Below are positions 13,819 through 26,619 of a stretch of 64,000 bases of DNA, piece after piece. The stretch lies in the sequence record PV654397.1. One strand, given 5' to 3'. The translations under genes and the position numbers were made by a program. The notes below the pieces were generated by a model, which was not told the DNA's origin, made no database searches, and saw only the letters and a program-made list of their open reading frames with translations. Positions within the stretch are counted from its first letter, which is position 1; each line of letters begins with the position of its first letter.

Positions 13819-13887
13819 TTTTTAATTCCTATTCAGTAGTTGATGTATGTATTATGCCAGTACTTAAAACTATTGTCAAACTATTTT

Positions 13888-14040
13888 TTAAAGTTTATCA
13901 ATGATTGATGCCGTTTCATTGATAGTCTTGCCGTGTTTTGCACACGCGATAACTGCTTTAAATTCCTTTGATGACCAATCTTTCTTACTGCATACTGACA
14001 TTACTTGTAAAGTAAAACAATCCAGGTCATAAGTATTCAT
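13888..14040 (-). CDS. small protein (50 aa, MNTYDLDC...; not in ORF track), paralog of 9685-9828
   Basis: GAGGA SD; shared residue pattern with 9685-9828. Confidence 0.65.
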   Translation of the reverse strand: MNTYDLDCFTLQVMSVCSKKDWSSKEFKAVIACAKHGKTINETASIIDKL

Positions 14041-14315
14041 CTTTATATCCTCAGTTAGTTAAGGTGTCTTGCCTTGATGTAATTAATTATACGCTAATCT
14101 CTTAATCGTGCAAGTACTTTTTATTACTTTTTGCAAAATACTTTAAACGCTCTCAATCGCATTACAACGACCTTAACGCCACCAGCTAGGGCAATGCATC
14201 AGATAATCAGTTTAATGCGTTAGAATCGTTTCTAGGCGGTGCTGGTGGCCTGGTAAACGATAAACACAAAAAAGCCCACCGTTTAAGGTGGGCTAGTGAT
14301 TCAGTACTTTAATTG

Positions 14316-14798
14316 TTATGCTTCAACTTTGCGATGAGCTTCGATCCATTCCTCGCGAGTCATACCACTGGAGTTAATCGCGTCCAGTACTACCGCAATG
14401 CAGTTACCACGCACCGGAATCAGATATTCTTCCCCGTTGTCCAGTACTACCGCTACGCGTTCCTGAATCCATTTTTTGGCTTTTACTTCTGGCTTGTCTT
14501 CCCCATACTTAACCGCCAGGGCTTTTTGTGCCATCTCTGTAACTACTTCCAGATCCAATCCAACTACTGCCGCCTGGATACTTTCAATTGTTGCTTGTAG
14601 TTCTGCTTCACGGGCCGCCTTTGCCGCTTCAATTTCTGCCGCTTTATTTGCTTGTAGTTCTTTCGCAGTACTGTACGCGATGTTAAAATTATTGCGTACC
14701 GCTTTCATGGTATCGTTATCCAGTTCAGCCAGGATCTCAGCCGCGACGTTAGTTTCATTTGCTACCAGTGCTTTGATGAATGATTTTACATTAGCCAT
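14316..14798 (-). CDS. H-NS-like protein (coiled-coil N-terminus, H-NS-type C-terminal domain with altered DNA-binding loop)
   Basis: LDNGEEYLIPVRGNCIAVVLDAINSSGMTREEWI aligns without gaps to E. coli H-NS [34 protein letters not shown]; Ala/Glu-rich coiled coil ending GLDLE. Confidence 0.55.
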   Translation of the reverse strand: MANVKSFIKALVANETNVAAEILAELDNDTMKAVRNNFNIAYSTAKELQANKAAEIEAAKAAREAELQATIESIQAAVVGLDLEVVTEMAQKALAVKYGEDKPEVKAKKWIQERVAVVLDNGEEYLIPVRGNCIAVVLDAINSSGMTREEWIEAHRKVEA

Positions 14799-14859
14799 TT
14801 TATAAATCCTCAATTAAAGTTTAGTTTACGTTTATTAGTGTATCAAAGTTTTCTCGACG

Positions 14860-14915
14860 TGTCCAGTTTTTCGTTCGACTTACTGGCGGTCTACTTAGTG
14901 CTCCCCGTCTTGATG
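14860..14915 (-). ncRNA. diverged copy C of the AAG-N4-ACGAAAA hairpin RNA, in the leader of the H-NS-like gene
   Basis: ACGGGGA...AAGTAG...CCAGT-AAGTCGAACGAAAA-ACTGG. Confidence 0.45.
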
Positions 14916-15031
14916 TAATACATTCTACGCTTTTCTGTGGTAATGTCAACTACTTTCTTAAAACTATTTTCAAAGTATCTCAGTACTACGATACTACAAA
15001 AACAAAAAAGCCCACCAGGTGGGCTATGTAC

Positions 15032-15262
15032 TTAATCAGTGAGTAAAATATTAAACACTTTACCATTTAACGTTATTGGTGCACTGCTACCAGGCTCAAG
15101 ATCCGTTAATATACCTGCAATCGCTTTATCATTGGCGACCTTTCCAGTGTCCAACAGTACTACAGTACTGATAAGATTAACGCTCGTTTCAATATCATAA
15201 TGCACGGCGTTAAGTAGTTGTGTAGTACTGCTTTCGTTAAGTAAAACAATTCGCTTAGTCAT
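15032..15262 (-). CDS. hypothetical early protein (76 aa)
   Basis: GGGGT SD. Confidence 0.65.
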   Translation of the reverse strand: MTKRIVLLNESSTTQLLNAVHYDIETSVNLISTVVLLDTGKVANDKAIAGILTDLEPGSSAPITLNGKVFNILLTD

Positions 15263-15283
15263 GATGTTACCCCGTAGTATCTA

Positions 15284-15583
15284 TCAACGGCAATTAATAA
15301 CGCCGGTATGCGTTACTTTCTCAGTATCCATTACAGTGACCGAACCGCGTTTAGTACTGGCATCATAATAAATTGTTGTGCTACCGTTTTCGTCTTCTTC
15401 ATGGAACGGGCCGTTTTTAAATGCTTCCGGCTGGATCTCTAAATCCTTTAATACAATCTCGCCAGTTCTTTCATCGGTCATTGCAACAGTGCACTGAATG
15501 AATTTTTCACTACTTACATCTAATGACGCATTAACAGCGAAAGAGGAAACAGATAAAGCCAGGGCGATGATTGCAATTTTCAT
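15284..15583 (-). CDS. secreted/periplasmic protein with signal peptide and terminal Cys pair
   Basis: MKIAIIALALSVSSFAVNA signal peptide; Cys near both ends of the mature chain. Confidence 0.7.
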   Translation of the reverse strand: MKIAIIALALSVSSFAVNASLDVSSEKFIQCTVAMTDERTGEIVLKDLEIQPEAFKNGPFHEEDENGSTTIYYDASTKRGSVTVMDTEKVTHTGVINCR

Positions 15584-15667
15584 TTGATTATCCTTAGTTA
15601 CCAGGGGGAACCGCTCCCCCTTGCGATGTAAAATATTATACAGTACTAAAAACTATTATCAAGTACT

Positions 15668-15904
15668 TTATGATTTTTTATAAAACATTTCAGCCGTGAT
15701 ATTTTTACCCGTTGGTTGTACTTTATCCAGAATTTTTTGATGCCCAGGCCGTCCAAATGAATATGATCCGTAAACCGTAAACCAGTAGTTACCCTCAGTG
15801 TTTACATGTACAGCACAATAGGGTACACCCCGCGATTCATCACTAGTAAAGTGTACTACCGTTCCCGTTACATTCGCAGACGTTGATTTGATTTGTTCAA
15901 GCAT
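15668..15904 (-). CDS. hypothetical early protein (78 aa)
   Basis: AAGGA SD, promoter and hairpin. Confidence 0.7.
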   Translation of the reverse strand: MLEQIKSTSANVTGTVVHFTSDESRGVPYCAVHVNTEGNYWFTVYGSYSFGRPGHQKILDKVQPTGKNITAEMFYKKS

Positions 15905-16013
15905 TTTCTTATTCCTTAGTTACCAGGGGAACCGCTCCCCCTATGCAAAACATTATACGCGTTTAAAAACTAATTGCAAGTATTTTAATAAAAAGTATTT
16001 GAAAAAATAGTTG

Positions 16014-16042
16014 TTGACAAGTGCATCCAGTACTGGCATAAT
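16014..16042 (+). promoter_or_regulatory. plus-strand sigma70 promoter antisense to the early genes
   Basis: TTGACA-17-CATAAT with AGTACT 9 bp after the -35. Confidence 0.75.
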
Positions 16043-16047
16043 TACTA

Positions 16048-16145
16048 CATCAAGACGAAACAGTCACTAACCCACCGGGTGCCGAGATCCGTCTATTAAA
16101 TGATTCAGTACTGAAAAAGTAACGGGGAGTTATTATCTCCCCGCG
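16048..16145 (+). ncRNA. CCC-N3-GGGUGC motif RNA candidate, copy 6
   Basis: GAC-GAAACA-GTC hairpin, ACCCACCGGGTGC, ends at hairpin CGGGGAG-TTATTAT-CTCCCCG; no ORF. Confidence 0.55.
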
Positions 16146-16148
16146 TTG

Positions 16149-16370
16149 TTATTTTGTAAGGTATAAACAGAAGTCACCTTTATTTGCTACGCCGCCAGTG
16201 TAACGCGAGGAATAGTTAGAAACGTCCTGGACTTCTGCTATTACCAGGGTATCATCATTCAATTCGTCGCAGAAGCAAACGGCTGGATCTTGTACGCCGA
16301 TTTTGTCAGCATGTTCCCGCATAGATTTAACCAGTGCTTCCAGTTGGGAAAGAGTAGTGATATTAGCCAT
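16149..16370 (-). CDS. hypothetical early protein (MANITTLS...)
   Basis: Start trimmed; GAGGA SD and hairpin. Confidence 0.7.
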   Translation of the reverse strand: MANITTLSQLEALVKSMREHADKIGVQDPAVCFCDELNDDTLVIAEVQDVSNYSSRYTGGVANKGDFCLYLTK

Positions 16371-16454
16371 TGTATTTTCCTCATTACCAGGGAGAACCAT
16401 TTCTCCCTTTGATGTAAACCATTATACAGTACTGAAAACTAATTGCAAGTACTT

Positions 16455-16643
16455 TTAATTAAATTCCATAAAATCATTTTCAACGTGCACAACAATCTGA
16501 TTATTTTTAAAGGACGCAGAAAACTCTATACAATCATAAACCGCTTTTTCTGTTACCAGACTATGAGCACCAATCGGATTAATTGGGGATTGAATTGTTT
16601 CAATCTCGTTACCTTGTTCATTAACGATTAAAATATTAAACAT
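16455..16643 (-). CDS. hypothetical early protein (62 aa)
   Basis: AGGAG SD; promoter leader duplicated at 16870-16910. Confidence 0.7.
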   Translation of the reverse strand: MFNILIVNEQGNEIETIQSPINPIGAHSLVTEKAVYDCIEFSASFKNNQIVVHVENDFMEFN

Positions 16644-16682
16644 TGCCGTTACTCCTGGATAGTGTTAACTCGATATAAAGTA

Positions 16683-16865
16683 TTATACGCCTTTATTGCT
16701 TAGTGTCCAGTGATCACGCATCATACGCCCCGCACGATCCCAGCTAGTAGGCATGGGTATGCCTTGCAATTCGTTAGGGGAGATCTCGACCTCGATCCCT
16801 ACATCAATAACAGTCATTCCAGCTTTCGCAGCTTGCTCGCGGATAACCTCAGATAATGTTGTCAT
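16683..16865 (-). CDS. hypothetical early protein (60 aa)
   Basis: AGGAG SD and own promoter. Confidence 0.65.
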   Translation of the reverse strand: MTTLSEVIREQAAKAGMTVIDVGIEVEISPNELQGIPMPTSWDRAGRMMRDHWTLSNKGV

Positions 16866-16939
16866 GATTAAAGCTCCTGGATAGTGTTAACTCGATATAA
16901 AGTATTATACAGTACTGAAAACTAATTGCAAGTACTTTT

Positions 16940-17200
16940 TCAATATTGTTTGTCGTCGTCTTCCTCGATGAATTGACCGACGAAATGATCTACTTTCGCT
17001 TTGAGGCTTTTATAATCTTCTTCTACTTCCTTTAAACGTTCCTGGTAGTATTCCAGTGCTTGAATATACGCCGCCTCAGCAGTTTTTGCACGCATAGCTA
17101 AATTCATTCCACGCGTTTCATCAAATAGCCAATAACCATCGGTGCAATGACTGATAGATAATGATTTACTTAGTGCTGTATAGCTAATTACTTTACTCAT
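16940..17200 (-). CDS. hypothetical phage protein with C-terminal coiled coil (86 aa)
   Basis: GAGGG SD; YWLFDETRGMNLAMRAKT motif typical of phage early proteins (recollection, not searched). Confidence 0.75.
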   Translation of the reverse strand: MSKVISYTALSKSLSISHCTDGYWLFDETRGMNLAMRAKTAEAAYIQALEYYQERLKEVEEDYKSLKAKVDHFVGQFIEEDDDKQY

Positions 17201-17257
17201 TAGATAACCCTCAGTAAAGGCGGGAACTATTACCCGCCATTATCTCAGTACTGAATA

Positions 17258-17497
17258 TTACATTCCAACCATTGCAGCACGGATCGCAGTAGTGCTATAC
17301 TTAAAGCCGTCCGGCGTTGTAGTAGTACCGTTGGCTTTTAATCTGCGGTACATACATTCCGCAGCAATATCTTTAGTTCTACTTTGTGCGATGCAACTTT
17401 GAGCAAGCCGATACAATGACTCACCGTTATTAATCCAAAGGCTTACATTCCAATGAGTTTTGTTTTTGTGACCGTTGTAAGTTTTAGTACTAGCCAT
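17258..17497 (-). CDS. early protein, paralog of 19300-19539
   Basis: Shared GHKNKTHWNVSLWINN and TPDGFKYSTTAIRAAMVGM. Confidence 0.8.
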   Translation of the reverse strand: MASTKTYNGHKNKTHWNVSLWINNGESLYRLAQSCIAQSRTKDIAAECMYRRLKANGTTTTPDGFKYSTTAIRAAMVGM

Positions 17498-17587
17498 TTT
17501 TAAATCCTCGTTTGAGCGGGGAACCACTCCCCGCCTCGATATAAAGTATTATACGCTTTTAAACTTAGTTTGCAAGTACTTTTTAAA

Positions 17588-18199
17588 TTAATATTCGATT
17601 GATTCCACTACGCCATCAATAACATTGAATTGATACTCGTTACCCTCAATCAGTGCCGTAATGTTTTCAGTAGTGAATTGATCCTCATATGCATTCTCTA
17701 AATCACGGTACAACTTGCGGGACAATTCACGAATAGTTTCAGTGAGTAGTTCCTCAAGCTCATTAACTAACGTTTCTTGTTTTGCGGTTAAATCAGTGTA
17801 AGCCGATTCAATGTACCCGCTTACCGTGTTTTCGTGTGCGTAGCGAGAGTGTGAACGTTCTACACTCATTGCCAAATCATCTTCATTCAACAAGTGACGG
17901 ATAGAACGATATTTCGTTAACGCTTTAATCTTGCGTAAAAACTTCACTGCGTCCACGCTGTCAGTACTGATTGATGCACCGTCACCCTGGGACCAAAAAC
18001 CGCTGAATTGTATTTCAGCTTCATTAATGCCATATTCCGGTAGTACTGTTTCTTTATAGTATTCAATTTCACTTTCAGAAAAATAATTGTCGTTTGAGTT
18101 TTTTTCACGTTCCCGAACCAGTTCGATAGCTGACGTTTGTTGTTCTGCGTTCAATTCAGAAAAAGCCATAACATAAGTAGTAGTAGTGATAGTTTTCAT
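17588..18199 (-). CDS. FSGFWSQGDG-motif protein (family seen on plasmids and phages, often auto-annotated as an antitoxin)
   Basis: TTTYVMAFSELNAEQQ N-terminus and IQFSGFWSQGDGAS core; family assignment from memory. Confidence 0.6.
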   Translation of the reverse strand: MKTITTTTYVMAFSELNAEQQTSAIELVREREKNSNDNYFSESEIEYYKETVLPEYGINEAEIQFSGFWSQGDGASISTDSVDAVKFLRKIKALTKYRSIRHLLNEDDLAMSVERSHSRYAHENTVSGYIESAYTDLTAKQETLVNELEELLTETIRELSRKLYRDLENAYEDQFTTENITALIEGNEYQFNVIDGVVESIEY

Positions 18200-18261
18200 T
18201 TTGTAACCCTCATTCAGTAGTTGATGTAAGTATTATACGCTTTTAAAAACATTTGTCAAAC

Positions 18262-18346
18262 TATTTTATCAGGGGAGTTTTTCGTGTGCCTTACTCCTGG
18301 GCTACTTAACGGGAAGTTACTTATTTCGTTCCCCGTCCTGATGTAA
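18262..18346 (-). ncRNA. two-hairpin RNA candidate with AAG-N4-ACGAAAA loop, copy B
   Basis: Near-identical to 6772-6856, with differences in the N4 loop segment and one stem. Confidence 0.55.
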
Positions 18347-18423
18347 AACATTATACGCCTTTAAACATAGTTTGCAAGTACTTTTTAAAAATAGTTTTCA
18401 GTACTGAATATTAAAAAAAAGTA

Positions 18424-18596
18424 TTGACAGCATTATCAAGTACTGGCATAATATACCCCATGACAACAGCTAACCCACCGGGTGCACAATTGTAACTATA
18501 CTAAACTAATTTTGCTATAGATACACTCCCGCACCCTATGGGCTACGGCTTATCTGCCAATGAATACATTATGCCAGTACTGACAAAATAAGTCAA
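18424..18596. promoter_or_regulatory. convergent promoter pair, each followed by a CCC-N3-GGGTGC motif (copies 7 and 8), motifs 45 bp apart
   Basis: Plus TTGACA-17-CATAAT 18424-18452, motif 18473-18485; minus TTGACT-17-CATAAT 18596-18568, motif 18543-18531. Confidence 0.65.
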
Positions 18597-18626
18597 TACC
18601 GGCAATTGTAAAGATTTGTAAACTGC

Positions 18627-18857
18627 TTATACTGCAATCGCGTCCAGGCTGTAATAATAATAAGTGCCGTATTGGTGTACTTTATTACCTTTTATTTCAG
18701 TACTGAATGAATCCGAACGATTTGCATATGATGTTAATTTAAAGTACTTTGATTTGCTGATACGTTGCCATACACCACAGATCCGCTGTAAGTAAGTAGT
18801 TTTATTCGTGGTAGTATCTTTTACGGTTTTAACTTCAGTCATATACATATTAGTCAT
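18627..18857 (-). CDS. hypothetical early protein (76 aa)
   Basis: GGAG SD, promoter and hairpin. Confidence 0.7.
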   Translation of the reverse strand: MTNMYMTEVKTVKDTTTNKTTYLQRICGVWQRISKSKYFKLTSYANRSDSFSTEIKGNKVHQYGTYYYYSLDAIAV

Positions 18858-18944
18858 TTTTATTACTCCAGGTTATAGGCGGGAAGTGTTCCCGCTCTCG
18901 ATGTAAAACATTATACGCCATTAAACATAGTTTGCAAGTACTTT

Positions 18945-19211
18945 TTATTCAAGTACTGCAATCTTTTTTGTACGGTACACGGTCACGCGGTTGCCCTTTC
19001 GGTCGAGCTTTATTTCTACCACTCGACGCGATACACTATCGGGACTTTTTAAGGCCGCTAACCAGTACTGTAATGATCTGGCGGTACTACGCTTTACAAT
19101 GGCCCAACGTTTACCACGTTCCGATTGTACGCCCATATCTTTAAACGTTGCCCCGTCCTGGCGTGCGGCGATCCGAGCTTGTTCACGCGTCGCAAAATAC
19201 TTAATATTCAT
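18945..19211 (-). CDS. early protein, paralog of 5259-5654
   Basis: Start trimmed to MNIKYFATRE; shared motifs. Confidence 0.75.
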   Translation of the reverse strand: MNIKYFATREQARIAARQDGATFKDMGVQSERGKRWAIVKRSTARSLQYWLAALKSPDSVSRRVVEIKLDRKGNRVTVYRTKKIAVLE

Positions 19212-19299
19212 GCTGTTGCCCTTATCGTTGGTGTATGAATAAAACACTATTATAAAGTACTATCCCCGTGCAATAGTACTTTAAATAAATTCTATTCTA

Positions 19300-19539
19300 T
19301 TACATTCCAACCATCGCCGCACGGATCGCAGTAGTGCTATATTTGAATCCGTCCGGTGTTTTATCTTGTCCAGTCTGTTCTAAAAATAACATCATATGAC
19401 GGGCCGCATCATTGCGATTAGTGTTGTCGTTAATAAAATCCAGGGCCAACCGATACAATCCCTCATCGTTATTAATCCACAGGCTTACATTCCAATGAGT
19501 TTTGTTTTTGTGACCTAAGAACATTTTTGATTTAGCCAT
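19300..19539 (-). CDS. early protein, paralog of 17258-17497
   Basis: Start trimmed to MAKSKMF; shared motifs. Confidence 0.8.
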   Translation of the reverse strand: MAKSKMFLGHKNKTHWNVSLWINNDEGLYRLALDFINDNTNRNDAARHMMLFLEQTGQDKTPDGFKYSTTAIRAAMVGM

Positions 19540-19632
19540 TTTTTTAATCCTCTTATATAGTGGGGAACTATTCCCCACCTGATGTAAAACATTATACGCT
19601 TTTAAACATAGTTTGCAAGTACTTTATTAAAC

Positions 19633-19995
19633 TTATTTGTAAATTTTGCCACTGTCAGCCCATACCAGGAAACGAGGCATATTATCCCATGCATCTTGTT
19701 TTAAGTTTAAGCCGTGCAATTCCTCAGTTGTTGCCATCCCTGGTACTGGCTTACTACACACCGCGAAATTTTCGCCCATATACTGATAAACCATCGTCAA
19801 ATCATTTGAGATCATTATATGGATCATTGAATCCAGCATCAAAGTAGCGGCGTATTGTTCACGCTTAAGCGGCAACATTGCAATAAGTTCCCGATAAGCT
19901 GCAATGTGAATTTTTACCGTTTCAGCCGGAAGACCTTTCATCTCATCGCGGAAGTTTACCAGGTTAAGCATGATTTTATTGATTTGAGTCGCCAT
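19633..19995 (-). CDS. hypothetical early protein (MATQINKI...), first ORF of the early block
   Basis: Start trimmed; SD, leader hairpin and promoter. Confidence 0.7.
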   Translation of the reverse strand: MATQINKIMLNLVNFRDEMKGLPAETVKIHIAAYRELIAMLPLKREQYAATLMLDSMIHIMISNDLTMVYQYMGENFAVCSKPVPGMATTEELHGLNLKQDAWDNMPRFLVWADSGKIYK

Positions 19996-20305
19996 CGTTT
20001 TAATCTCTCTTAATGTGTAGCGGGAAGTGTTCCCGCTCTCGATGTAAAACATTATACGCTTTTATCAGTACGGTGCAAGTACTTTCTACAAATACTTTTA
20101 AAATAGTTTTCTTTCTATATAGGAGTACTATTATTCAGTACTGAATCAATCCACCAAATCATCCCTATACCCCGTAAAACGGCCTCAGACGCATTCTAAC
20201 GCATTAATACACCTAAGCTATACATTTGCACCACTCCCAACAATCCAGGGCGTTACGGGCCGTTTAAACGCGTTAAATTATTTTCAATTATTTTGTTTTT
20301 AGGTA

Positions 20306-20499
20306 TTGACTTGATCCTGAAAAAGCGTATAATTACTACATAGACGCGAGAAAGCGGAAACCCCAGAGGGTGCGGAATTACGCCCAAAATTCAAGATATA
20401 AAAAAAGGATACACTCCCGCACCCTAGCAGGTAAACGCACTTTCTCAGTACTGAAATATAGTACCATAGTCCGGCCCAGGATAGCAAGCAAATTAATTA
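20306..20499. promoter_or_regulatory. second convergent promoter pair with CCC-N3-GGGTGC motifs (copies 9 and 10), 45 bp apart
   Basis: Plus TTGACT-16-TATAAT 20306-20333, motif ends 20373; minus TTGCTA-18-TACTAT, degenerate motif begins 20419. Confidence 0.55.
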
Positions 20500-20521
20500 A
20501 AACTTTTTTGCTTCCAGGGTA

Positions 20522-20615
20522 TTGCTTTATTTTTTCAGTACTGTATAATAGTTCCATCAAGTCGAGAAAGACTCAAGCCCACCGGGTGCATAGTTACGCC
20601 CAAAATTCAGTACTG
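20522..20615 (+). ncRNA. promoter plus CCC-N3-GGGUGC motif RNA candidate, copy 11
   Basis: TTGCTT-16-TATAAT, GTC-GAGAAA-GAC hairpin, GCCCACCGGGTGC; no ORF. Confidence 0.5.
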
Positions 20616-20646
20616 AAAAAATTTTTAAAAATATCCGTCCAGGTCG

Positions 20647-20675
20647 TTGACATTGCCCCCAGTTTATAAGATAAT
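20647..20675 (+). promoter_or_regulatory. sigma70-type promoter firing into the ORF-free zone
   Basis: TTGACA-17-GATAAT. Confidence 0.6.
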
Positions 20676-20771
20676 GATTCCAGATTCAGAAAAATCTAAC
20701 TCCAGATACTGCGGGGAAACTATCCCCACGCGGTAGGGGAACTATTGGAAAAACAAAATAAAATTTTGATT

Positions 20772-20940
20772 TAGCCGTCTATACTTCCAGACGTGTAACC
20801 ATCTAGCCGTTTAGCCATCCAGCCATCCAGAAATCTAGCCGTTTAGCCGTCTAGATGGATAGCCATCTTTACTTCCAGACTTCTGGAGGGCTAGACATAT
20901 CTACGCCCAAAATCCATCCAGGGTAACTACACCCAAAATC
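20772..20940. repeat. cluster of AGCC(G/A)T x7, TACTTCCAGAC x2 and TAC(G/A)CCCAAAATC x2
   Basis: Read directly; partly 8-bp tandem periodicity. Confidence 0.75.
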
Positions 20941-21269
20941 CGTCAGTACTATACCATAGATCTATCTTTTGAAAGGGAGTATTCAGTACTGCCATCATAG
21001 CCCTCACTATGTTACCCTAGGAGGATGAAGACTATCATGTAGTACTGAATACTGTTAGAGGGAATCCACCAGCTTGTGCTGGTGGCATAATGCTTTAGAT
21101 TAAAATCAGTACTGATACCATTCTGTTAATATCAGTACTGTTATTACGATTTTCATATGAGGTTCAAAAAGATGTACCACCACAGGAGGAACTATCTTTT
21201 CTGTACTGTCTCACGACAGGAGGTAGAGTAAATGAATTGTTCGCAGCAACTCATCACCCTATGTAGAAC

Positions 21270-21297
21270 ATTATACAGTACTGAATCATAAAGTCAA
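21270..21297 (-). promoter_or_regulatory. sigma70-type promoter with no convincing downstream ORF
   Basis: TTGACT ttatgattc AGTACT g TATAAT. Confidence 0.65.
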
Positions 21298-21572
21298 TAA
21301 CTTTCTTTCATCTTTCAGTACTGATATTCTTGAGAACTACCCGACTACAAACATCATTATATCCCACAAATCATAAACGTCCCAACGTAAATTTCAACTT
21401 TCGAAGATCCAACTTTTATTTCATAGGTACTCCAAAATTTTTAGGATCGAGATTTAGGATGGAGTACTAACCAACTTTTTGCTGGAGCCTCAAGGGGTAA
21501 TTGAATTTTACCCCGAAGGGTAAAGGGGTAATTGAAATTAAGGTGAAAGTAATAATTCAGTACTAATCATTG

Positions 21573-21842
21573 CGTGATTACTTTTGATTACATTTGATGT
21601 AATTTGCAAAATGGAAAAGGAGCTTGGAAACTACAAAGTACGGCAGACTTCCTCTGCCTACTTAGTGGCATATCGACACCTTCAGTACTGAATACTTTTG
21701 GGGCAGTACTGAATCCTTCCCTAGCATTCTTGAGTAATCTTGTCTATAATAATCAGTACTGAATCATATATAATCATTCTGTGATTCTACGGTGCTCATA
21801 TAAATGTTTATATATGATTACTTATGACTACATATGATTACG
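21573..21842. repeat. two triplets of 10-bp phased TGATTAC-like repeats (21573-21602 and 21813-21842)
   Basis: CGTGATTACT TTTGATTACA TTTGATGTAA; TATGATTACT TATGACTACA TATGATTACG. Confidence 0.6.
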
Positions 21843-21964
21843 GGGTTTAGCCTGGGGAGAATCCTAGTGATCGCATTTGTCCAGGCTGAATTTTAACAAT
21901 TCTTCTAATTGTTAAAGCCTGTCCAATGCTTTCCCTGCGGAGCTTCCCCTGTCTATATGTTGAA

Positions 21965-22171
21965 TTACTTCCTATATATAAGCATTAACATATAGTAGTA
22001 CTGATTATGCTGTACATTCTCTTTAATATTATAAGGGTCTATAGCAATCTCGGTACATCTGTTAAATGCATAGCTATTAAATGCCAGTACTATTATAGAT
22101 CTAATCCATGCTTGGTCAGTCGGTGGTAGTTTACTTATATAGTACTCTTTATAGTTTTTTATGTTCTGCAT
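21965..22171 (-). CDS. ~60-aa paralog array member (KEYY...L.LIY family)
   Basis: KEYYISKL start, MLMLIYRK end; packed operon. Confidence 0.7.
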   Translation of the reverse strand: MQNIKNYKEYYISKLPPTDQAWIRSIIVLAFNSYAFNRCTEIAIDPYNIKENVQHNQYYYMLMLIYRK

Positions 22172-22182
22172 AGTATACCTTA

Positions 22183-22374
22183 TTATTTCAAAGTACCATA
22201 TAGTACTCTTAATAGGAAGTAGTACGTATTAGAGATATCATTAGTAGTTAAAACAATCTTTGTACACATATTAAATTCGTATTGAGTCATTGCCAGGGGG
22301 ATTAAATTGTTAACCCATGCTTGTTCGTTTTCTTTTAGTTTACTTATATAGAAATCTTTATGTTCTTTATTCAT
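22183..22374 (-). CDS. ~60-aa paralog array member
   Basis: KDFYISKL...PL...F..C. Confidence 0.7.
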   Translation of the reverse strand: MNKEHKDFYISKLKENEQAWVNNLIPLAMTQYEFNMCTKIVLTTNDISNTYYFLLRVLYGTLK

Positions 22375-22576
22375 ATAGGAATAGTATACCTATGATGCCG
22401 GAGTACATATTAGTACTGTTATTATTGGCGTTTGCGTTTAAAGTCATTTGAATACAATTATTGTAGCATACTCTGCCGAAATAAGTATCAGTACTTAAAG
22501 GTGCTGTAGTCCTTAGAAACATTTGTTCTGTGGGGCTGAGGTGTTTGGAATAGAATTCTTTATGTTCTTTATTCAT
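22367..22576 (-). CDS. ~60-aa paralog array member
   Basis: KEFYSKHL; very similar to 22950-23156. Confidence 0.75.
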   Translation of the reverse strand: MNKEHKEFYSKHLSPTEQMFLRTTAPLSTDTYFGRVCYNNCIQMTLNANANNNSTNMYSGIIGILFLYE

Positions 22577-22581
22577 ATTAG

Positions 22582-22767
22582 TTAGTGTCTGTATATAAGT
22601 AATAGTAAGAATACGTACTGCACCTGTTCATCTTTAGTATTGAGTACTGTACGTATTGCGTCATGGAACAAGAATATAGTACTTGGGTCATTAGAATTTA
22701 AGGGGTTTACGGGGACGGCGTGTTTGTAGTTCCCTTTAACAAATTGTATATAGTATTCTCTATGCAT
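22582..22767 (-). CDS. ~60-aa paralog array member
   Basis: REYY...LLLIYRH. Confidence 0.7.
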   Translation of the reverse strand: MHREYYIQFVKGNYKHAVPVNPLNSNDPSTIFLFHDAIRTVLNTKDEQVQYVFLLLLIYRH

Positions 22768-22768
22768 A

Positions 22769-22957
22769 TCAGTACCTATATATTAGGGCGAGAATGTAGT
22801 ACAGTTTATATGTATTATAATCTGGGTTGATAGCACATAGTGTGTGGTAGTGGAATTGTTTGGTATTTTTCTTATCCTTGATATCTATTGGGTTTAGTGG
22901 TATAAGCATTTGGGAGTTTAGTTCCAGATGGTTTAAGTAGAATTCTTTGTTATTCAT
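22769..22957 (-). CDS. ~60-aa paralog array member
   Basis: KEFYLNHL...LALIYRY. Confidence 0.7.
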   Translation of the reverse strand: MNNKEFYLNHLELNSQMLIPLNPIDIKDKKNTKQFHYHTLCAINPDYNTYKLYYILALIYRY

Positions 22958-23156
22958 AGAAGAATATTAGTCCCATTACGCCTGAGTATTGAATATTTTT
23001 GTTATTGTTTTCTAAAGCTTCTAGAGTAATACGTATACAATTATTAAAGCAATCTCTGGCGTGTGGTGTATCTAAACTTAAAGGTGATACACTCCTTAGA
23101 AACATTTGTTCTGATGCACTGAGGTGTTTGGTGTAAAATTCTTTCTGTTCGTTCAT
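22950..23156 (-). CDS. ~60-aa paralog array member
   Basis: KEFYTKHL; very similar to 22367-22576. Confidence 0.75.
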   Translation of the reverse strand: MNEQKEFYTKHLSASEQMFLRSVSPLSLDTPHARDCFNNCIRITLEALENNNKNIQYSGVMGLIFFYE

Positions 23157-23166
23157 ATTGGCCTCT

Positions 23167-23355
23167 TTAGTACACGAAAGCTAGGTACAGTGTATGATAC
23201 AGTACTCGATGATAGCTATCAAAATCTAGTATACATGCTTTAGTGCACATAGTAAAGTACACTTTATCGTTTTGAGCATTGATACCGCGAGGTTTATCTA
23301 ATAGATTAGTACTGAGGTACATTGGGAAATATTTTGTGTAGTATTCTTTATGCAT
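23167..23355 (-). CDS. ~60-aa paralog array member (start trimmed to MHKEYY)
   Basis: Family motif. Confidence 0.7.
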   Translation of the reverse strand: MHKEYYTKYFPMYLSTNLLDKPRGINAQNDKVYFTMCTKACILDFDSYHRVLYHTLYLAFVY

Positions 23356-23356
23356 A

Positions 23357-23539
23357 TTAGTACCTGAATATAAGTAGGATAGTGTTATATAATTGGTCAT
23401 AACTACTACTATTTTCTATACTTCGTTCTATGCAGTTATTGAATCCCAGTACTGCCAAATCGTTATCCAGGGGGACTTTGTATCTGGCGTAGTGTTCAAA
23501 AATGCTGGGGAGAAATTGTGTGTAGTATTCTTTGTGCAT
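23357..23539 (-). CDS. ~60-aa paralog array member
   Basis: MHKEYY...LLIFRY. Confidence 0.7.
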   Translation of the reverse strand: MHKEYYTQFLPSIFEHYARYKVPLDNDLAVLGFNNCIERSIENSSSYDQLYNTILLIFRY

Positions 23540-23540
23540 A

Positions 23541-23732
23541 TTAGTACTTATATATTAGTAAAAGGATGTGATACAGTACTCGATTATAGTCTTCAATATA
23601 TATCGAGGATTTAGTGCACTGAATGAAGTAGTCTTTTTCGTAGTTTTTTTCTATACCCAATGGTTCTGTTGGTAGAAGGTGTTGGAGATACATTGGGAGT
23701 TTCTCTATGTAGTATTCTTTGTGGTTATTCAT
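23541..23732 (-). CDS. ~60-aa paralog array member
   Basis: KEYYIEKL...LLLIYKY. Confidence 0.7.
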   Translation of the reverse strand: MNNHKEYYIEKLPMYLQHLLPTEPLGIEKNYEKDYFIQCTKSSIYIEDYNRVLYHILLLIYKY

Positions 23733-23740
23733 ATTATGTG

Positions 23741-23914
23741 TTATTTCGTGAAAACAAGGGTTAGTACTGCATAGTACAAGTCATACGTATCTTTAGGGTT
23801 AATAGCACCTTTAATACATTCTTTCATTACTTCATTATAGATAATTTTAGTACTGAATGTATTGGATGTTACTATATCGGAATTAAGGTACGAGAGGTAG
23901 AATTCTTTATACAT
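23741..23914 (-). CDS. ~60-aa paralog array member (start trimmed to MYKEFY)
   Basis: Family motif. Confidence 0.7.
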   Translation of the reverse strand: MYKEFYLSYLNSDIVTSNTFSTKIIYNEVMKECIKGAINPKDTYDLYYAVLTLVFTK

Positions 23915-24566
23915 AGTTTGAAATATACGTAATGAGGTGATGAAATTTCTTATCAGTACTGATAAGTTCCTGTACATGTTTTGTTAGTTTGTACGCGTTT
24001 TTATAGAGTCCTGGATTATCGATTACAGTACTGTACATGAATTCTTCTTCCTCGGATAATTCTTTGTGTTCTAGTTCTTTGAGGAATTGCAGTACTGTAT
24101 CAGTTTCGTTAGTACGTTGCTTTTGGAAGAAGTGCATGTTATCGTGTATTTTTTCTGAACCCATGCAGTACATATCGCCGATTTGGAATTGTGCAGTACT
24201 GATATCATGGGTGCTATTACAATTCCCGAAGAAGTATACATTCCCGAAAGATAGAATTATAGTGCACGGGATATTATCCATGTGTATATAGATAGATGCA
24301 TTCTTTAGTGCTTTTGTGCTGGTATTAGTACTCAATACTTTTAAATCAGTATTATAGATATTAATAAAAGCAAGAGCTATATTATTTTTCTTCAAGTACG
24401 ATTTGAGGTTCTTAGATACGAGAACATTTCTGGATTTTTTCTTTTTATTTCGTTTCTTTAGTACACACGGGTCGTAAGTATATGCTGGTGTAAAAGATTC
24501 TGCTTGAATACTGTTGAGGTATTTAAAGTGCTTAAGGTATTGTTTGCTGTGTGCATTAAGTTTCAT
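23907..24566 (-). CDS. hypothetical protein (219 aa) with LSEEE-F-YS C-terminal motif
   Basis: AAGGA SD; ELSEEEEFMYS resembles 43041-43691 and 60957-61529. Confidence 0.75.
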   Translation of the reverse strand: MKLNAHSKQYLKHFKYLNSIQAESFTPAYTYDPCVLKKRNKKKKSRNVLVSKNLKSYLKKNNIALAFINIYNTDLKVLSTNTSTKALKNASIYIHMDNIPCTIILSFGNVYFFGNCNSTHDISTAQFQIGDMYCMGSEKIHDNMHFFQKQRTNETDTVLQFLKELEHKELSEEEEFMYSTVIDNPGLYKNAYKLTKHVQELISTDKKFHHLITYISNYV

Positions 24567-24576
24567 TTGGTTTCCT

Positions 24577-24756
24577 TTATACAGATGCGAGAGCGAGGAT
24601 TTCCCTGAAGGGATTATCTTTTGTTAGTGCGTGATGAATGCAGCTATTGAGATTAATATTTTTAGTACTATTAGTTGCCAGGTTGTAGTACTTCACGAAG
24701 GTGTCGTACATGAAACGGTCTTTAATGCTTATGTGTTCTATATAGTATTCTTGCAT
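24577..24756 (-). CDS. ~60-aa paralog array member (MQEYYIEH...; not in ORF track)
   Basis: 59 aa, AAGGA SD, ends FREILALASV. Confidence 0.7.
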   Translation of the reverse strand: MQEYYIEHISIKDRFMYDTFVKYYNLATNSTKNINLNSCIHHALTKDNPFREILALASV

Positions 24757-24764
24757 ATTATTCC

Positions 24765-24953
24765 TTACATAGAGATGAGTTTCAGTACATCAATATACAT
24801 ATAACGTTCAGATGACAGTACACGGGTAGTGATAATCTCAATCGATATATTTTTAATTCCATGTGCAGATGATTGATGGTGCTGAATAAATGAGTTGTGC
24901 ATACTTTGTTCTATGTGGTTTAGTTTATTGAAGTAGTACTCAAAAGTGTTCAT
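24765..24953 (-). CDS. ~60-aa paralog array member
   Basis: MNTFEYYFNKL...YIDVLKLISM. Confidence 0.7.
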   Translation of the reverse strand: MNTFEYYFNKLNHIEQSMHNSFIQHHQSSAHGIKNISIEIITTRVLSSERYMYIDVLKLISM

Positions 24954-24960
24954 GTCTACC

Positions 24961-25140
24961 TTAGATTGAGATTAGTTTAAGTACTTCTCTGTACGTGTAC
25001 TTTTCGTTTTGTGCTTCTACTGTACACGAGAGTAGATAACGTTTTTTATCTCTTTTGTTCCCGACTGTGTAGTACCTTTGGAATTTATTATAGTTGTATC
25101 TATCTTTGTGCTGGAGGTTATAGATATAGAATTCTTGCAT
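24961..25140 (-). CDS. ~60-aa paralog array member (MQEFYIYN...; not in ORF track)
   Basis: 59 aa; ends AQNEKYTYREVLKLISI, identical to 25343-25525. Confidence 0.75.
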   Translation of the reverse strand: MQEFYIYNLQHKDRYNYNKFQRYYTVGNKRDKKRYLLSCTVEAQNEKYTYREVLKLISI

Positions 25141-25148
25141 AGAGTACC

Positions 25149-25334
25149 TTAGATTGCTATCAGTTTGAGTACTTCAATATATGTGCGGTACTCTGCTTTA
25201 ATTAAATTTGTACACACTGTAAGGGAATTTCTTTGTATAAGTTTATTGCCGCTTTTATACGCATTTCTCCACACATAGAGATGAGATCTTTCAGGCATAG
25301 ATAGTTTATTTGTATAGTACTCAAATGTATTCAT
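25149..25334 (-). CDS. ~60-aa paralog array member
   Basis: MNTFEYYTNKL...YIEVLKLIAI. Confidence 0.7.
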   Translation of the reverse strand: MNTFEYYTNKLSMPERSHLYVWRNAYKSGNKLIQRNSLTVCTNLIKAEYRTYIEVLKLIAI

Positions 25335-25342
25335 ATATTACC

Positions 25343-25525
25343 TCAAATAGAGATTAGTTTAAGTACTTCTCTGTATGTGTACTTTTCGTTTTGTGCATCT
25401 CTTGTGCTTGTATATAGGTATCCTCGACGATATTTGTTGCTCCCGTTCTTGTAGTTGAATTCGAACTTATTGTAGATGAATCTATCGCCAGGCTGTAATT
25501 TACTTAAGTACAATTCAATGCTCAT
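25343..25525 (-). CDS. ~60-aa paralog array member (start trimmed to MSIELY)
   Basis: Ends YTYREVLKLISI. Confidence 0.7.
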   Translation of the reverse strand: MSIELYLSKLQPGDRFIYNKFEFNYKNGSNKYRRGYLYTSTRDAQNEKYTYREVLKLISI

Positions 25526-25535
25526 AGTATTCTCT

Positions 25536-25721
25536 TTACATATCAATAAGTTTCAGTACTGCTCTGTACGTGTACTTAGTTGTTAGTGCTTCTTTTATAG
25601 CAATACAGAAGTAATGTTGTTTGTCTCTTATACTACCGCGTTTGTAGTACCATACATTGGAGTTGTGGGTGTACTTGTCCCTGTCGGATAGATTTTGGTA
25701 ATAGTATAATATATGATTCAT
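25536..25721 (-). CDS. ~60-aa paralog array member
   Basis: Ends YTYRAVLKLIDM. Confidence 0.7.
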   Translation of the reverse strand: MNHILYYYQNLSDRDKYTHNSNVWYYKRGSIRDKQHYFCIAIKEALTTKYTYRAVLKLIDM

Positions 25722-25930
25722 GGTAATGTAATTAGCCTTATTATGTTAAAGTACTCGGTCCCTGGTACACCTTGTAGAATATTATCAACTACATTTTCTT
25801 GGTGCAGGATTAATACATTCGGTGCGGTTCTTTTAAGGTTTTTTAAAGTACTGTATTCTTGTTTAAGGATGAACTGTACATCTTTAGGGAGAATATCTAA
25901 GTAGTACTGGTGTATGTTCATTGTTTTCAT
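25718..25930 (-). CDS. ~60-aa paralog array member
   Basis: MNIHQYYLDIL; similar to 26129-26341. Confidence 0.65.
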   Translation of the reverse strand: MKTMNIHQYYLDILPKDVQFILKQEYSTLKNLKRTAPNVLILHQENVVDNILQGVPGTEYFNIIRLITLP

Positions 25931-25941
25931 ATAGTACTCTT

Positions 25942-26127
25942 TTAGAACTTAAAGATGAGGTTCATGATAGATAAGTACTTAGTTTCAGGAAATTGATGTT
26001 CTATTGCATAACGTGTCTCCAGTCTGAAGTCAAATTTATAAAAGGGACTATTCATATCCATAGGTTCATTGGGAAATGAATCTCTGTATTGTTTGTGCAG
26101 CTTACTACAGTAGAATTCTTTATACAT
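25942..26127 (-). CDS. ~60-aa paralog array member
   Basis: MYKEFYCSKL...LIFKF. Confidence 0.7.
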   Translation of the reverse strand: MYKEFYCSKLHKQYRDSFPNEPMDMNSPFYKFDFRLETRYAIEHQFPETKYLSIMNLIFKF

Positions 26128-26128
26128 A

Positions 26129-26341
26129 TTAGTGCTCGATTAAAAGGGTTAGGATGTAATAGTATTGCATACTTTCTACCCCTTGTACAGCATTTCTTAT
26201 TTTATTATTCCTGTACGAGTTCAAGAGTTTAGGACAATGTTTGAAGTTTATATAATTATTTTGTGTATACAGTAGGCTTTCTCGTAGACCTTTTGTTGGT
26301 AGTGCATCAATGTAGTACTGTTCAATGTTCATAGTGTTCAT
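26129..26341 (-). CDS. ~60-aa paralog array member
   Basis: MNIEQYYIDAL...ILTLLIEH. Confidence 0.65.
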   Translation of the reverse strand: MNTMNIEQYYIDALPTKGLRESLLYTQNNYINFKHCPKLLNSYRNNKIRNAVQGVESMQYYYILTLLIEH

Positions 26342-26565
26342 AGAGCTACCAGTACTAAGATTTTTGATAATTGTTTATTGCTATTCCCGCAGATGTTGCT
26401 GTGTAAAATACTCACTACAAGGGTATCAAGTGCATTGTTCAGCATAAGGTTACATCCAGTACTGTTATGTGTTTTTAGCTCAATTAGCCACGAACTATCC
26501 GCGAGAAACTTCGCGTACTCTAGTTCATTTAGAGTATTAATGTAGTACTTAAGTGTAGTTGTCAT
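26338..26565 (-). CDS. first gene of the small-paralog operon (75 aa)
   Basis: LKYYINTL...ILVLVAL; AAGGAG SD. Confidence 0.65.
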   Translation of the reverse strand: MTTTLKYYINTLNELEYAKFLADSSWLIELKTHNSTGCNLMLNNALDTLVVSILHSNICGNSNKQLSKILVLVAL

Positions 26566-26590
26566 GTGTAGTTCTCCTTATATTCCTTCT

Positions 26591-26619
26591 ATAGTACACC
26601 AGTACTGAAAGGATGTCAA
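26591..26619 (-). promoter_or_regulatory. sigma70 promoter of the small-paralog operon
   Basis: TTGACA-17-TACTAT with AGTACT in the spacer. Confidence 0.75.

What the first reader, a model, noticed from the sequence alone, without database searches (positions are those of the whole stretch)
21965..26565. Tandem operon of 20 divergent ~60-aa paralogs
Seen: 20 ORFs of 57-75 aa, two of them missing from the track (24577-24756, 24961-25140), packed head to tail under one sigma70 promoter (26591-26619). They share an N-terminal (K)E(F/Y)Y...L and a C-terminal Y..(V/I)L.LI helix with hypervariable middles. There are two subfamilies and recent duplicates (22367/22950; 24961/25343 share AQNEKYTYREVLKLISI). 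Inference: a gene-accordion battery built on one small helical scaffold with diversified surfaces, such as inhibitors or decoys for a variable host target family.
Basis: partly seen in the sequence, partly recalled or inferred. Interest (0 to 1): 0.66.

Follow-up and report, generated by a model that had tools for sequence, protein, structure and literature searches.

The report
Jumbo-phage operon of 20 mini-proteins
A giant E. coli phage carries, next to its terminal repeat, one early operon of 20 related ~60-residue helical mini-proteins with a conserved core and varied surfaces, which probably each bind a different host protein, although no function has been shown.

Summary
The window is the left end of Escherichia phage WPEC5 (Asteriusvirus-like, 381 kb). 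Positions 21965-26565 (minus strand) hold 20 tightly packed ORFs of 57-75 aa.

- **Family:** Subfamilies A (11 genes), B (6) and C1 (2) are linked by profile-profile comparison. The first gene (C2) is only weakly linked.
- **Fold:** AlphaFold models of an A and a B member, the B one made from subfamily-B sequences only, both give four helices at the aligned motifs (pLDDT 84.5 and 90.5). No PDB, Pfam, NCBIfam or PADLOC relative was found.
- **Range:** The family has only 34 clusters among 1.84 billion proteins. Every genome context examined was an Asteriusvirus-type phage.
- **Promoter:** The TTGACA-17-TACTAT promoter and AAGGAG site are almost invariant in lineages whose proteins share only 30-57% identity.
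- **Selection:** Orthologues evolve at dN/dS of about 0.4, so the ORFs are coding.
- **Copy number:** It ranges from 13 to 22 per phage, through gain and loss of whole genes.
- **Age:** The paralogues are old (closest pair 59% identity, dS about 0.77), so this is not a recent accordion.

The best reading is an immediate-early battery of cytoplasmic binder proteins for host takeover or counter-defence. That function is inferred, not shown.

The parts
26591..26619 (-). Sigma70-type promoter of the operon (TTGACA, 17-nt spacer containing CAGTACTG, TACTAT)
   Evidence: Consensus scan scores 10/12; sequence read. The -35, spacing, -10 and spacer motif are nearly invariant in 6 lineages, including JNE01 and a metagenomic lineage.
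26574..26579 (-). AAGGAG ribosome-binding site of the first gene
   Evidence: AAGGAG is invariant in all 6 lineages.
26338..26565 (-). Gene 1, 75 aa, subfamily C2. It shares the terminal motifs, but its membership of the family is unproven.
   Evidence: hhalign to C1 gives only 22% and to A/B only the N-terminal motif. It is the first gene in every lineage.
26129..26341 (-). Gene 2, 70 aa, subfamily C1
   Evidence: hhalign A-C1 gives 87% over 57 columns.
25942..26127 (-). Gene 3, 61 aa, subfamily A
25718..25930 (-). Gene 4, 70 aa, subfamily C1. It is a variable cassette, absent from SHEFM2K, SP27, UE-S1 and SD-15.
24577..25721 (-). Genes 5-10, the block of six subfamily-B genes: 25536-25721, 25343-25525, 25149-25334, 24961-25140, 24765-24953, 24577-24756 (59-62 aa)
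   Evidence: AlphaFold model of 24961-25140: four helices, pLDDT 90.5. The block shrinks to 1-2 genes in UE-S1 and SD-15.
23907..24566 (-). 219-aa orphan gene embedded in the operon (phrog_29152). It is conserved at this position in all lineages.
   Evidence: No Pfam, PDB, NCBIfam or Atlas relative. Not related to the small family. It shares 40% identity with the JNE01 orthologue, at dN/dS 0.21.
21965..23914 (-). Genes 11-20, the block of ten subfamily-A genes: 23741-23914, 23541-23732, 23357-23539, 23167-23355, 22950-23156, 22769-22957, 22582-22767, 22367-22576, 22183-22374, 21965-22171 (57-69 aa)
   Evidence: phrog_11711 matches 11 of the 20 members. AlphaFold model of 21965-22171: four helices, pLDDT 84.5.
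21882..21921 (-). Conserved hairpin just downstream of the last gene, the core of a longer structure at 21848-21955. It may be a 3'-end, terminator or RNA-stabilising element, though it has no U-tract.
   Evidence: Free energy -39.7 kcal/mol, z -3.8. Conserved in other lineages, with two covarying pairs among 4 sequences.
1..21662 (.). Context: the left direct terminal repeat. The operon starts about 300 bp inside the unique region and is transcribed towards the repeat.
   Evidence: Positions 1-21662 are identical to 359665-381326 of the record.

Best explanation
The region is a single immediate-early operon of an Asteriusvirus-type jumbo phage. Host RNA polymerase reads it from one conserved sigma70-type promoter. 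It encodes about 20 paralogous, soluble, cytoplasmic mini-proteins of about 60 residues, plus one unrelated 219-aa protein.

Each mini-protein is a short N-terminal helix packed on a three-helix bundle. The buried residues are conserved: the E-Y-Y...L of helix 1, the C-T of helix 3 and the Y...L.LI of helix 4. Helix 2, the exposed faces and the loops differ between paralogues.

The most likely function is a battery of stoichiometric binders. Each would be kept for its own host partner (defence, toxin-antitoxin or housekeeping proteins) or for a competitor's protein, and made at the start of infection for takeover or counter-defence. The repertoire changes by gain, loss and swapping of whole gene cassettes. 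The likely mechanism is recombination between the conserved gene ends.

**Shown:** the genes, their homology, the predicted fold, the conserved promoter, purifying selection, and copy-number and repertoire variation.

**Inferred:** early timing, protein binding, and the nature of the targets.
For: - **Compact co-oriented ORFs:** they show coupling-type overlaps and a single upstream promoter-like site.
- **Promoter conservation:** the promoter, spacing and RBS are nearly invariant (56 of 116 columns) in lineages whose proteins share 30-57% identity.
- **Promoter class:** the -35 and the CAGTACTG spacer motif match the 26 or more sigma70-type promoter cassettes that fill the adjacent 21.7-kb terminal repeat. 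In the related phage CBB, RpoD-like promoters in front of short hypothetical ORFs near the terminal repeat are read as the early host-takeover region (PMC5259590).
- **Homology:** hhalign A-B 95%, A-C1 87%.
- **Fold:** models have pLDDT 84.5 and 90.5, with four helices at the aligned motifs. Conserved columns are core positions.
- **Coding under constraint:** pooled dN/dS is 0.37-0.48.
- **Paralogues kept individually:** each is retained as an orthologue across phages.
- **Soluble and intracellular:** there is no hydrophobic run long enough for a TM segment, and pI is 5.5-9.6.
- **Not structural:** no small array protein appears in the part of the phAPEC6 virion table seen, which lists nothing between gp347 and the neighbouring RCC1-like gp549 and does include a 4.7-kDa protein (PMC7247149).
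- **Architecture:** it resembles three-helix designed mini-binders in size and layout, at Z 4.7-4.9. This is a generic match.
Against: - No experiment or homology points to any target.
- dN/dS is below 1 everywhere, so there is no arms-race signature at the resolution available.
- The RNA libraries only hold low-depth contig fragments, which could be DNA carry-over. Transcription and timing are therefore not shown.
- Internal promoters cannot be excluded.
- The conserved 219-aa gene and the divergent RCC1-like array suggest the proteins might serve a phage-internal role instead.
Confidence: 0.45

Rival explanations
1. The mini-proteins work with phage partners rather than host targets. They could be specificity adaptors, regulators or chaperones for the co-operonic 219-aa protein, or for the divergently transcribed array of about 15-16 RCC1-like beta-propeller proteins, some of which are virion-associated.
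For: - The 219-aa gene sits at the same place in the operon in all lineages. A B-type gene lies directly upstream of it in the nine PBECO4-like phages and JNE01.
- A beta-propeller gene (RCC1-like, or Kelch-like by Pfam in one metagenomic lineage) is always the divergent neighbour.
- Rough copy numbers of the two arrays correlate (r = 0.69, n = 9, not phylogenetically independent).
- RCC1-like gp549 and gp551 are in the phAPEC6 virion.
Against: - The promoter is of the early sigma70 class, while virion proteins are normally late.
- The RCC1 counts used are candidate counts from a single-sequence search, so they are coarse.
- No complex prediction could be run.
- Chaperones of fibre-like proteins are normally encoded next to their client, not in a separate operon.
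Confidence: 0.17
2. The proteins mainly mediate phage-phage competition: superinfection exclusion, or interference with co-infecting phages or prophages of the host.
For: This fits the same facts as the host-binder model: early, small, diversified, and a variable repertoire.
Against: - Known exclusion proteins of T-even phages are mostly membrane proteins (own knowledge). These proteins have no long hydrophobic run.
- Nothing specific points to this reading.
Confidence: 0.1
3. They are small DNA- or RNA-binding regulators (helix-turn-helix-like) that set the temporal programme, for example at the abundant CAGTACTG palindrome.
For: - Four of the six B members are basic, with pI 9.4-9.6.
- CAGTACTG is enriched about 54-fold in the window and lies in promoter spacers.
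Against: - Neither model matches any HTH or other nucleic-acid-binding domain in the PDB. The best Z values are 3.9 and 6.0, to generic helical repeats.
- Many members are neutral or acidic.
- Twenty regulators for one motif is implausible.
Confidence: 0.07
4. The ORFs are not functional proteins. They would be spurious frames or decaying duplicates in repetitive DNA.
For: The ORFs are short, have no known domains, and no proteomic or clean transcript evidence exists.
Against: - All 20 frames are intact and packed on one strand.
- Orthologous frames are intact in 10 phages and 3 lineages.
- Synonymous changes exceed non-synonymous ones per site about 2.3-fold (93/660 against 171/2673 sites).
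- Predicted folds are confident.
Confidence: 0.03

Closest known systems
PHROG phrog_11711 (unknown function) and phrog_29152
   Same: Eleven of the 20 small proteins match phrog_11711 (best E = 1.4e-27). The 219-aa protein matches phrog_29152 over its full length.
   Different: Neither PHROG has any assigned function. Nine of the 20 members gave no PHROG match, and SHEFM2K's own annotation marks its B- and C-type genes 'No_PHROG'. Nothing in the Asteriusvirus papers searched describes the array.
Early host-takeover modules next to terminal repeats (SPO1 host-takeover module, T5 pre-early region, Tre genes of Twort-like phages, the early region of phage CBB)
   Same: Both have many small ORFs of unknown function behind strong host-type promoters, in or next to a long terminal repeat (CBB: PMC5259590). 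SPO1, T5 and Tre are cited from my own knowledge.
   Different: Those modules are mostly unrelated genes, each with its own promoter. Here 19-20 paralogues of one fold share one promoter in one operon.
Phage anti-defence loci (anti-CRISPR, anti-restriction, T4 Dmd-type antitoxin mimics)
   Same: They share small size, early expression, cytoplasmic location, a strain-variable repertoire and a narrow taxonomic range.
   Different: There is no sequence or fold similarity to any solved protein. Anti-defence loci usually hold unrelated genes rather than a paralogue family. No inhibition has been tested.
Terminal multigene families of large eukaryotic DNA viruses (ASFV MGF families, poxvirus terminal families) and the poxvirus K3L gene accordion
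   Same: Both are tandem paralogue families near a genome end whose copy number and repertoire differ between isolates. The comparison itself is from my own knowledge.
   Different: The K3L accordion involves near-identical, recently amplified copies. Here the closest copies share 59% identity with dS of about 0.77, and each is conserved as an orthologue.
Three-helix mini-binders and helical-repeat fragments (structural analogues only)
   Same: The B-subfamily model aligns with designed 55-58-residue binders and helical-repeat units at Z 4.7-6.0.
   Different: These scores are within the range expected for any small helical bundle. They imply no homology or function.

Membership tests
One homologous family of mini-proteins (A+B+C1+C2) | Significant full-length profile-profile similarity between subfamilies | tested here: met
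   hhalign A-B gives 95% probability over 54 columns and A-C1 gives 87% over 57 columns. Cross-subfamily HMM hits rank above background. This is met for 19 of the 20 genes.
One homologous family of mini-proteins (A+B+C1+C2) | The first gene (C2, 26338-26565) belongs to the family | tested here: inconclusive
   Only the N-terminal motif aligns with A and B. C1-C2 probability is 22%. The tree joins C2 to a C1 member, but on a very long branch.
One homologous family of mini-proteins (A+B+C1+C2) | A common fold | tested here: met
   The A model has helices at 4-12, 17-24, 33-44 and 53-66 (pLDDT 84.5). The B model, made from B sequences only, has helices at 2-7, 11-26, 29-43 and 49-58 (pLDDT 90.5). 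The helices fall on the aligned conserved motifs of alignment A1. No direct 3D superposition was possible, and C1 and C2 were not modelled.
phrog_11711 | HMM match to the PHROG profile | tested here: met
   11 of 20 members match, best E = 1.4e-27. The other 9 do not match.
Known anti-defence, defence or toxin-antitoxin protein families | Sequence or fold similarity to a described family | tested here: not met
   No match in Pfam, NCBIfam or PADLOC beyond noise. None by PDB sequence, PDB fold or the ESM Atlas.
Known anti-defence, defence or toxin-antitoxin protein families | Demonstrated inhibition of a host defence system | not testable with these tools
   This needs expression against defence-system libraries.
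Early host-takeover module | Host sigma70-type promoter, conserved, at or next to the terminal repeat | tested here: met
Early host-takeover module | Transcription in the first minutes of infection | tested here: inconclusive
   The only RNA libraries holding the sequence are metatranscriptomes with low-depth contigs. The raw-read run had no reads.
Gene accordion (recent tandem amplification) | Near-identical tandem copies | tested here: not met
   The closest pairs share 59% and 56% amino-acid identity with dS 0.76-0.79. Each copy has its own orthologues.
Gene accordion (recent tandem amplification) | Copy number differs between related isolates | tested here: met
   13-22 copies in 10 phages, 41 orthogroups at 70% identity, 8 of them present in all nine PBECO4-like phages.
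Helix-turn-helix regulators | Fold match to an HTH domain | tested here: not met
   No HTH protein is among the best matches of either model.
Small membrane proteins (holins, exclusion proteins) | A transmembrane segment or signal peptide | tested here: not met
   The longest run free of charged and polar residues is 9 residues. GRAVY is negative for 19 of the 20 members.
RiPP precursor-peptide arrays | A disordered precursor with a Cys/Ser/Thr-rich core, next to a recognisable modifying enzyme | tested here: not met
   The models are confidently folded. Members have 0-2 Cys each. The 219-aa neighbour has no known domain.

The most novel reading that the evidence does not exclude
The array is a natural library of mini-binders on a previously undescribed four-helix scaffold. 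Each paralogue would neutralise a different host immunity or toxin protein. The cassette repertoire of a given Asteriusvirus (13-22 of at least 41 types) would help set which E. coli or Salmonella strains it can grow on.
Probability: 0.3. Interest if true: 0.8.

Novelty: new variant of a known kind. Interest (0 to 1): 0.55.

Why it matters
Small early phage proteins are the main source of new inhibitors of bacterial immunity and of essential host machines, but they usually occur as unrelated singletons.

This locus differs. One compact scaffold has been diversified into at least 41 sequence types, with 13-22 per genome expressed from one conserved promoter. If each type has its own target, the locus offers dozens of natural, ready-made binders. 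It would also be a tractable system for studying how one fold evolves new specificities. It might help explain host range in a group of jumbo phages now being proposed for therapy against APEC, UPEC and STEC.

If the proteins turn out to serve the 219-aa protein or the RCC1-like array instead, the locus would give a first handle on those equally unexplained gene families.

Tried and rejected
**Searches that found nothing**
- **Alternative genetic code:** stop-codon counts per frame show no recoding in the poorly ORF-ed first 21 kb. That region is simply full of small genes.
- **tRNA and Rfam scans of the window:** nothing.
- **Pfam, NCBIfam and PADLOC:** only noise. Examples are EB1 at E = 0.007 in one member and PtuB at E = 0.0027 in one member.
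- **PDB by sequence profile:** nothing.
- **Fold searches:** Foldseek against PDB and VIA-align wide for both models gave only generic helical matches, Z up to 6.0. BFVD returned only members of the family itself.
- **ESM Atlas:** no usable hit for the 219-aa protein, and scores of 0.80 or below for a small member.

**Ideas rejected**
- **219-aa ORF as an expanded family member:** rejected, hhalign probability 1.4% or less.
- **RiPP-precursor, immunity-protein, HTH and membrane-protein readings:** rejected as listed in the membership table.
- **Positive selection:** not found. dN/dS is 0.3 at the termini and 0.5 in the middle.

**Inconclusive or unavailable**
- **RNA evidence:** three metatranscriptomes hold low-depth fragments that cannot be told from DNA carry-over. 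The one raw-read run had no reads.
- **CMSTMSU:** this record is marked UNVERIFIED and has fragmented ORFs, so it was left out of the copy-number comparison.
- **Additional copies:** none elsewhere in the 381-kb genome.

Full report
**Origin of the window.** The array region is 100% identical to Escherichia phage WPEC5 (PV654397.1, 381,326 bp, hospital wastewater). It is 85-99% identical to many Asteriusvirus jumbo myoviruses of E. coli and Salmonella, the PBECO4/121Q group. Window coordinates equal record coordinates. Positions 1-21662 recur at 359665-381326, so the window begins with a 21.7-kb direct terminal repeat. This agrees with the 20.7-kb repeat reported for the relative Sharanji (PMC11895373) and the 22.5-kb repeat of CBB (PMC5259590). 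The array starts about 300 bp inside the unique region and is transcribed towards the repeat.

**The observation.**
- Twenty ORFs of 57-75 aa lie head to tail on the minus strand from 26565 down to 21965. Gaps run from -8 to +11 nt, and several junctions are ATGA-type overlaps.
- A 219-aa ORF (23907-24566) sits between the tenth and eleventh small genes.
- All 21 are annotated 'hypothetical protein' in GenBank.
- A multiple alignment shows the N-terminal (K)E(Y/F)Y..(K/H)L motif, a central C-T, and the C-terminal Y...L.LI motif.

**Are they one family?**
- BLASTP gives full-length collinear matches inside three groups. Group A has 11 genes: the ten at 21965-23914 plus 25942. Group B has six genes at 24577-25721. 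Group C1 has two genes, 25718 and 26129.
- Subfamily HMMs find the other subfamilies only weakly, although above most of the 585 background ORFs.
- Subfamily alignments enriched with orthologues gave hhalign probabilities of 95% for A-B (54 columns) and 87% for A-C1 (57 columns).
- The first gene (C2, 26338) shares only the N-terminal motif with A and B. Its probability against C1 is 22%.
- The homology of 19 genes is therefore well supported, and that of gene 1 is open.
- The 219-aa protein is unrelated, with hhalign probability 1.4% or less.

**Fold.**
- AlphaFold2 of 21965-22171, with a 35-sequence family alignment, gave four helices at 4-12, 17-24, 33-44 and 53-66 (pLDDT 84.5, pTM 0.71).
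- AlphaFold2 of the B member 24961-25140, with B-subfamily sequences only, gave helices at 2-7, 11-26, 29-43 and 49-58 (pLDDT 90.5, pTM 0.71).
- In both models the helices fall on the aligned conserved motifs.
- Column entropy among the 20 paralogues is lowest at E9, Y10, Y11, L15, C39, T40, Y58, L62, L64 and I65. It is highest in helix 2 and the loops. This is the pattern of a conserved core under varied surfaces.
- No solved structure resembles either model beyond generic helical arrangements. Foldseek E-values were 7 or higher. VIA-align gave Z up to 3.9 for the A model and up to 6.0 for the B model.
- BFVD returns only family members.
- The proteins have no hydrophobic run long enough for a TM segment, pI 5.5-9.6 and 0-2 cysteines.

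**Distribution.**
- Eleven members match phrog_11711 (unknown function), and the 219-aa protein matches phrog_29152.
- Pfam, NCBIfam, PADLOC, PDB sequences and the ESM Atlas give nothing.
- A word-indexed search of 5.8 billion proteins found 48 small proteins. The named ones are from Asteriusvirus-type E. coli and Salmonella phages, and the longest contigs are about 350 kb.
- An exhaustive HMMER profile search of 1.84 billion cluster representatives found only 34 clusters, all 44-75 aa.
- The most divergent ones lie in the same architecture in phage JNE01 (an Asteriusvirus sharing 80% nucleotide identity with PBECO4 over 59% coverage) and in a metagenomic lineage. That architecture is a beta-propeller gene transcribed leftwards, then a C2-type gene, C1-type genes, further small genes, a gene of about 220 aa and more small genes. 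In JNE01, where members were classified, B-type genes precede the 224-aa gene and an A block follows it.
- No further copy exists elsewhere in the WPEC5 genome.

**Expression signals.**
- The only strong promoter-like site in the right place is TTGACA-17-TACTAT at 26619-26591, followed by AAGGAG and ATG. The consensus scan alone is no better than chance for the region (32 sites found, 36 expected).
- An alignment of the intergenic region from six lineages is more telling. The -35, the 17-nt spacing, the CAGTACTG in the spacer, the -10 and the RBS are almost invariant, while the proteins have diverged to 30-57% identity.
- The same -35 and spacer motif characterise 26 or more promoter cassettes in the terminal repeat. 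On the minus strand these read TTGCAA or TTGACA, N17, TATAAT, then a GGGGA..TCCCC hairpin and an RBS. Each precedes a small gene.
- In phage CBB such RpoD-like promoters before short ORFs are interpreted as the early host-takeover region (PMC5259590). Early transcription by host polymerase is therefore a reasonable inference, but it has not been shown.
- Three metatranscriptomes contain low-depth fragments that could be DNA. One raw-read RNA run had no reads.
- Just downstream of the last gene there is a stable structure (free energy -39.7 kcal/mol, z -3.8). Its core hairpin at 21882-21921 is conserved, with two covarying pairs among four sequences. It may mark the 3' end.

**Evolution.**
- HMM scans of the homologous locus in ten phages give 13-22 family members, always in the same order of blocks.
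- At 70% identity there are 41 orthogroups. Eight are present in all nine PBECO4-like phages. The others come and go as whole genes. The segment between C1 and the B block exists in two alternative versions, and the B block shrinks from six genes to one or two in UE-S1 and SD-15.
- A maximum-likelihood tree groups sequences by orthology, not by phage. Several duplications predate the split from JNE01.
- Pooled Nei-Gojobori estimates for reciprocal-best orthologues give dN/dS of 0.37-0.48. The value is about 0.3 in the first 17 and last 16 codons and about 0.5 in the middle.
- For comparison, the 219-aa gene gives 0.20-0.43 and the first RCC1-like gene gives 0.27.
- The ORFs are thus under moderate purifying selection, which argues strongly that they are translated. 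No overall positive selection is visible.
- Repeats of about 66 nt span gene junctions (family D18). They could serve as substrates for unequal recombination, but this is an inference.

**Function.**
- No tool gave a functional lead.
- The supporting facts are these: a conserved host-type promoter next to the terminal repeat, small soluble folded proteins, a conserved core with varied surfaces, individually conserved paralogues, a strain-variable repertoire and restriction to one phage genus. No small array protein appears in the part of the phAPEC6 virion table seen, although it lists a 4.7-kDa protein (PMC7247149).
- These fit best with a battery of early binder proteins for host takeover or counter-defence.
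- The main rival is a phage-internal role with the conserved 219-aa protein or the neighbouring RCC1-like array. Two members of that array are virion proteins in phAPEC6. Its rough copy number tracks that of the small family (r = 0.69, n = 9).

**Literature.** Full-text term searches of the fEgEco12, phAPEC6 and Sharanji papers, and three library searches, found no description of this array. [quoted passage not shown]

**Verdict.** This is a real, conserved and so far undescribed multigene operon of mini-proteins with no detectable relatives outside Asteriusvirus-type phages. The scaffold-with-diversified-surfaces reading holds. The recent-accordion reading does not. The function remains inferred.

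Noticed in passing
window 1-21662: This is a 21.7-kb direct terminal repeat, identical to 359665-381326 of the record. It is packed with small minus-strand genes. Each sits behind its own near-consensus sigma70-type promoter (TTGCAA or TTGACA, N17, TATAAT), a GGGGA..TCCCC hairpin and an RBS. There are at least 26 such cassettes, and the layout resembles a host-takeover module.
   Followed up: partly
whole window, e.g. 21683, 21704, 21754, 23954-24201, 26600: The palindromic octamer CAGTACTG occurs 61 times against 1.1 expected. Forty copies lie in the first 21.8 kb (terminal repeat and the junction up to the array), often in the promoter spacer just upstream of the -10. Four lie inside the 219-aa gene and one in the array's promoter. 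It may be a binding site for an unknown regulator.
   Followed up: partly
window 26672-44893 (+): A tandem array of about 15-16 paralogous genes of about 380 aa encodes RCC1-like beta-propeller proteins (Pfam WD40_RLD or RCC1 in relatives). It is transcribed divergently from the small-ORF operon. Two orthologues are virion-associated in phAPEC6. Copy number varies between phages and roughly tracks that of the small family (r = 0.69, n = 9).
   Followed up: partly
window 21848-21955 (-), core 21882-21921: A conserved hairpin lies directly after the last gene of the operon (free energy -39.7 kcal/mol, z -3.8). Its inner stem shows compensatory changes between lineages. It has no U-tract, so its role as terminator, processing site or stabiliser is open.
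   Followed up: partly
window 26641-26671: The part of the divergent intergenic region nearest the first RCC1-like gene is also conserved across lineages. It contains TGATATAAT on the plus strand, but this lies only about 5 nt from the AAGGAG of that gene. Whether it is that gene's promoter is unclear.
   Followed up: no
window 1404-1496, 3664-3756, 6942-7034, 10959-11051: There are four copies of a 93-nt repeat ending in a terminator-like hairpin (AAAGGGACTGACCGGAGTCAATCCCTTTTTT) inside the terminal repeat.
   Followed up: no
window 20100-21965: This stretch of about 1.8 kb spans the end of the terminal repeat and has no convincing ORF. It does hold a full promoter cassette (21297-21270, minus strand) and several CAGTACTG copies. 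No Rfam family matches it.
   Followed up: partly
L015 2916-3488 (Salmonella phage SD-15_S21): The orthologue of the 219-aa gene is 190 aa here because of an internal deletion of about 30 residues. That part of the protein is therefore dispensable, or the gene is decaying in this phage.
   Followed up: no
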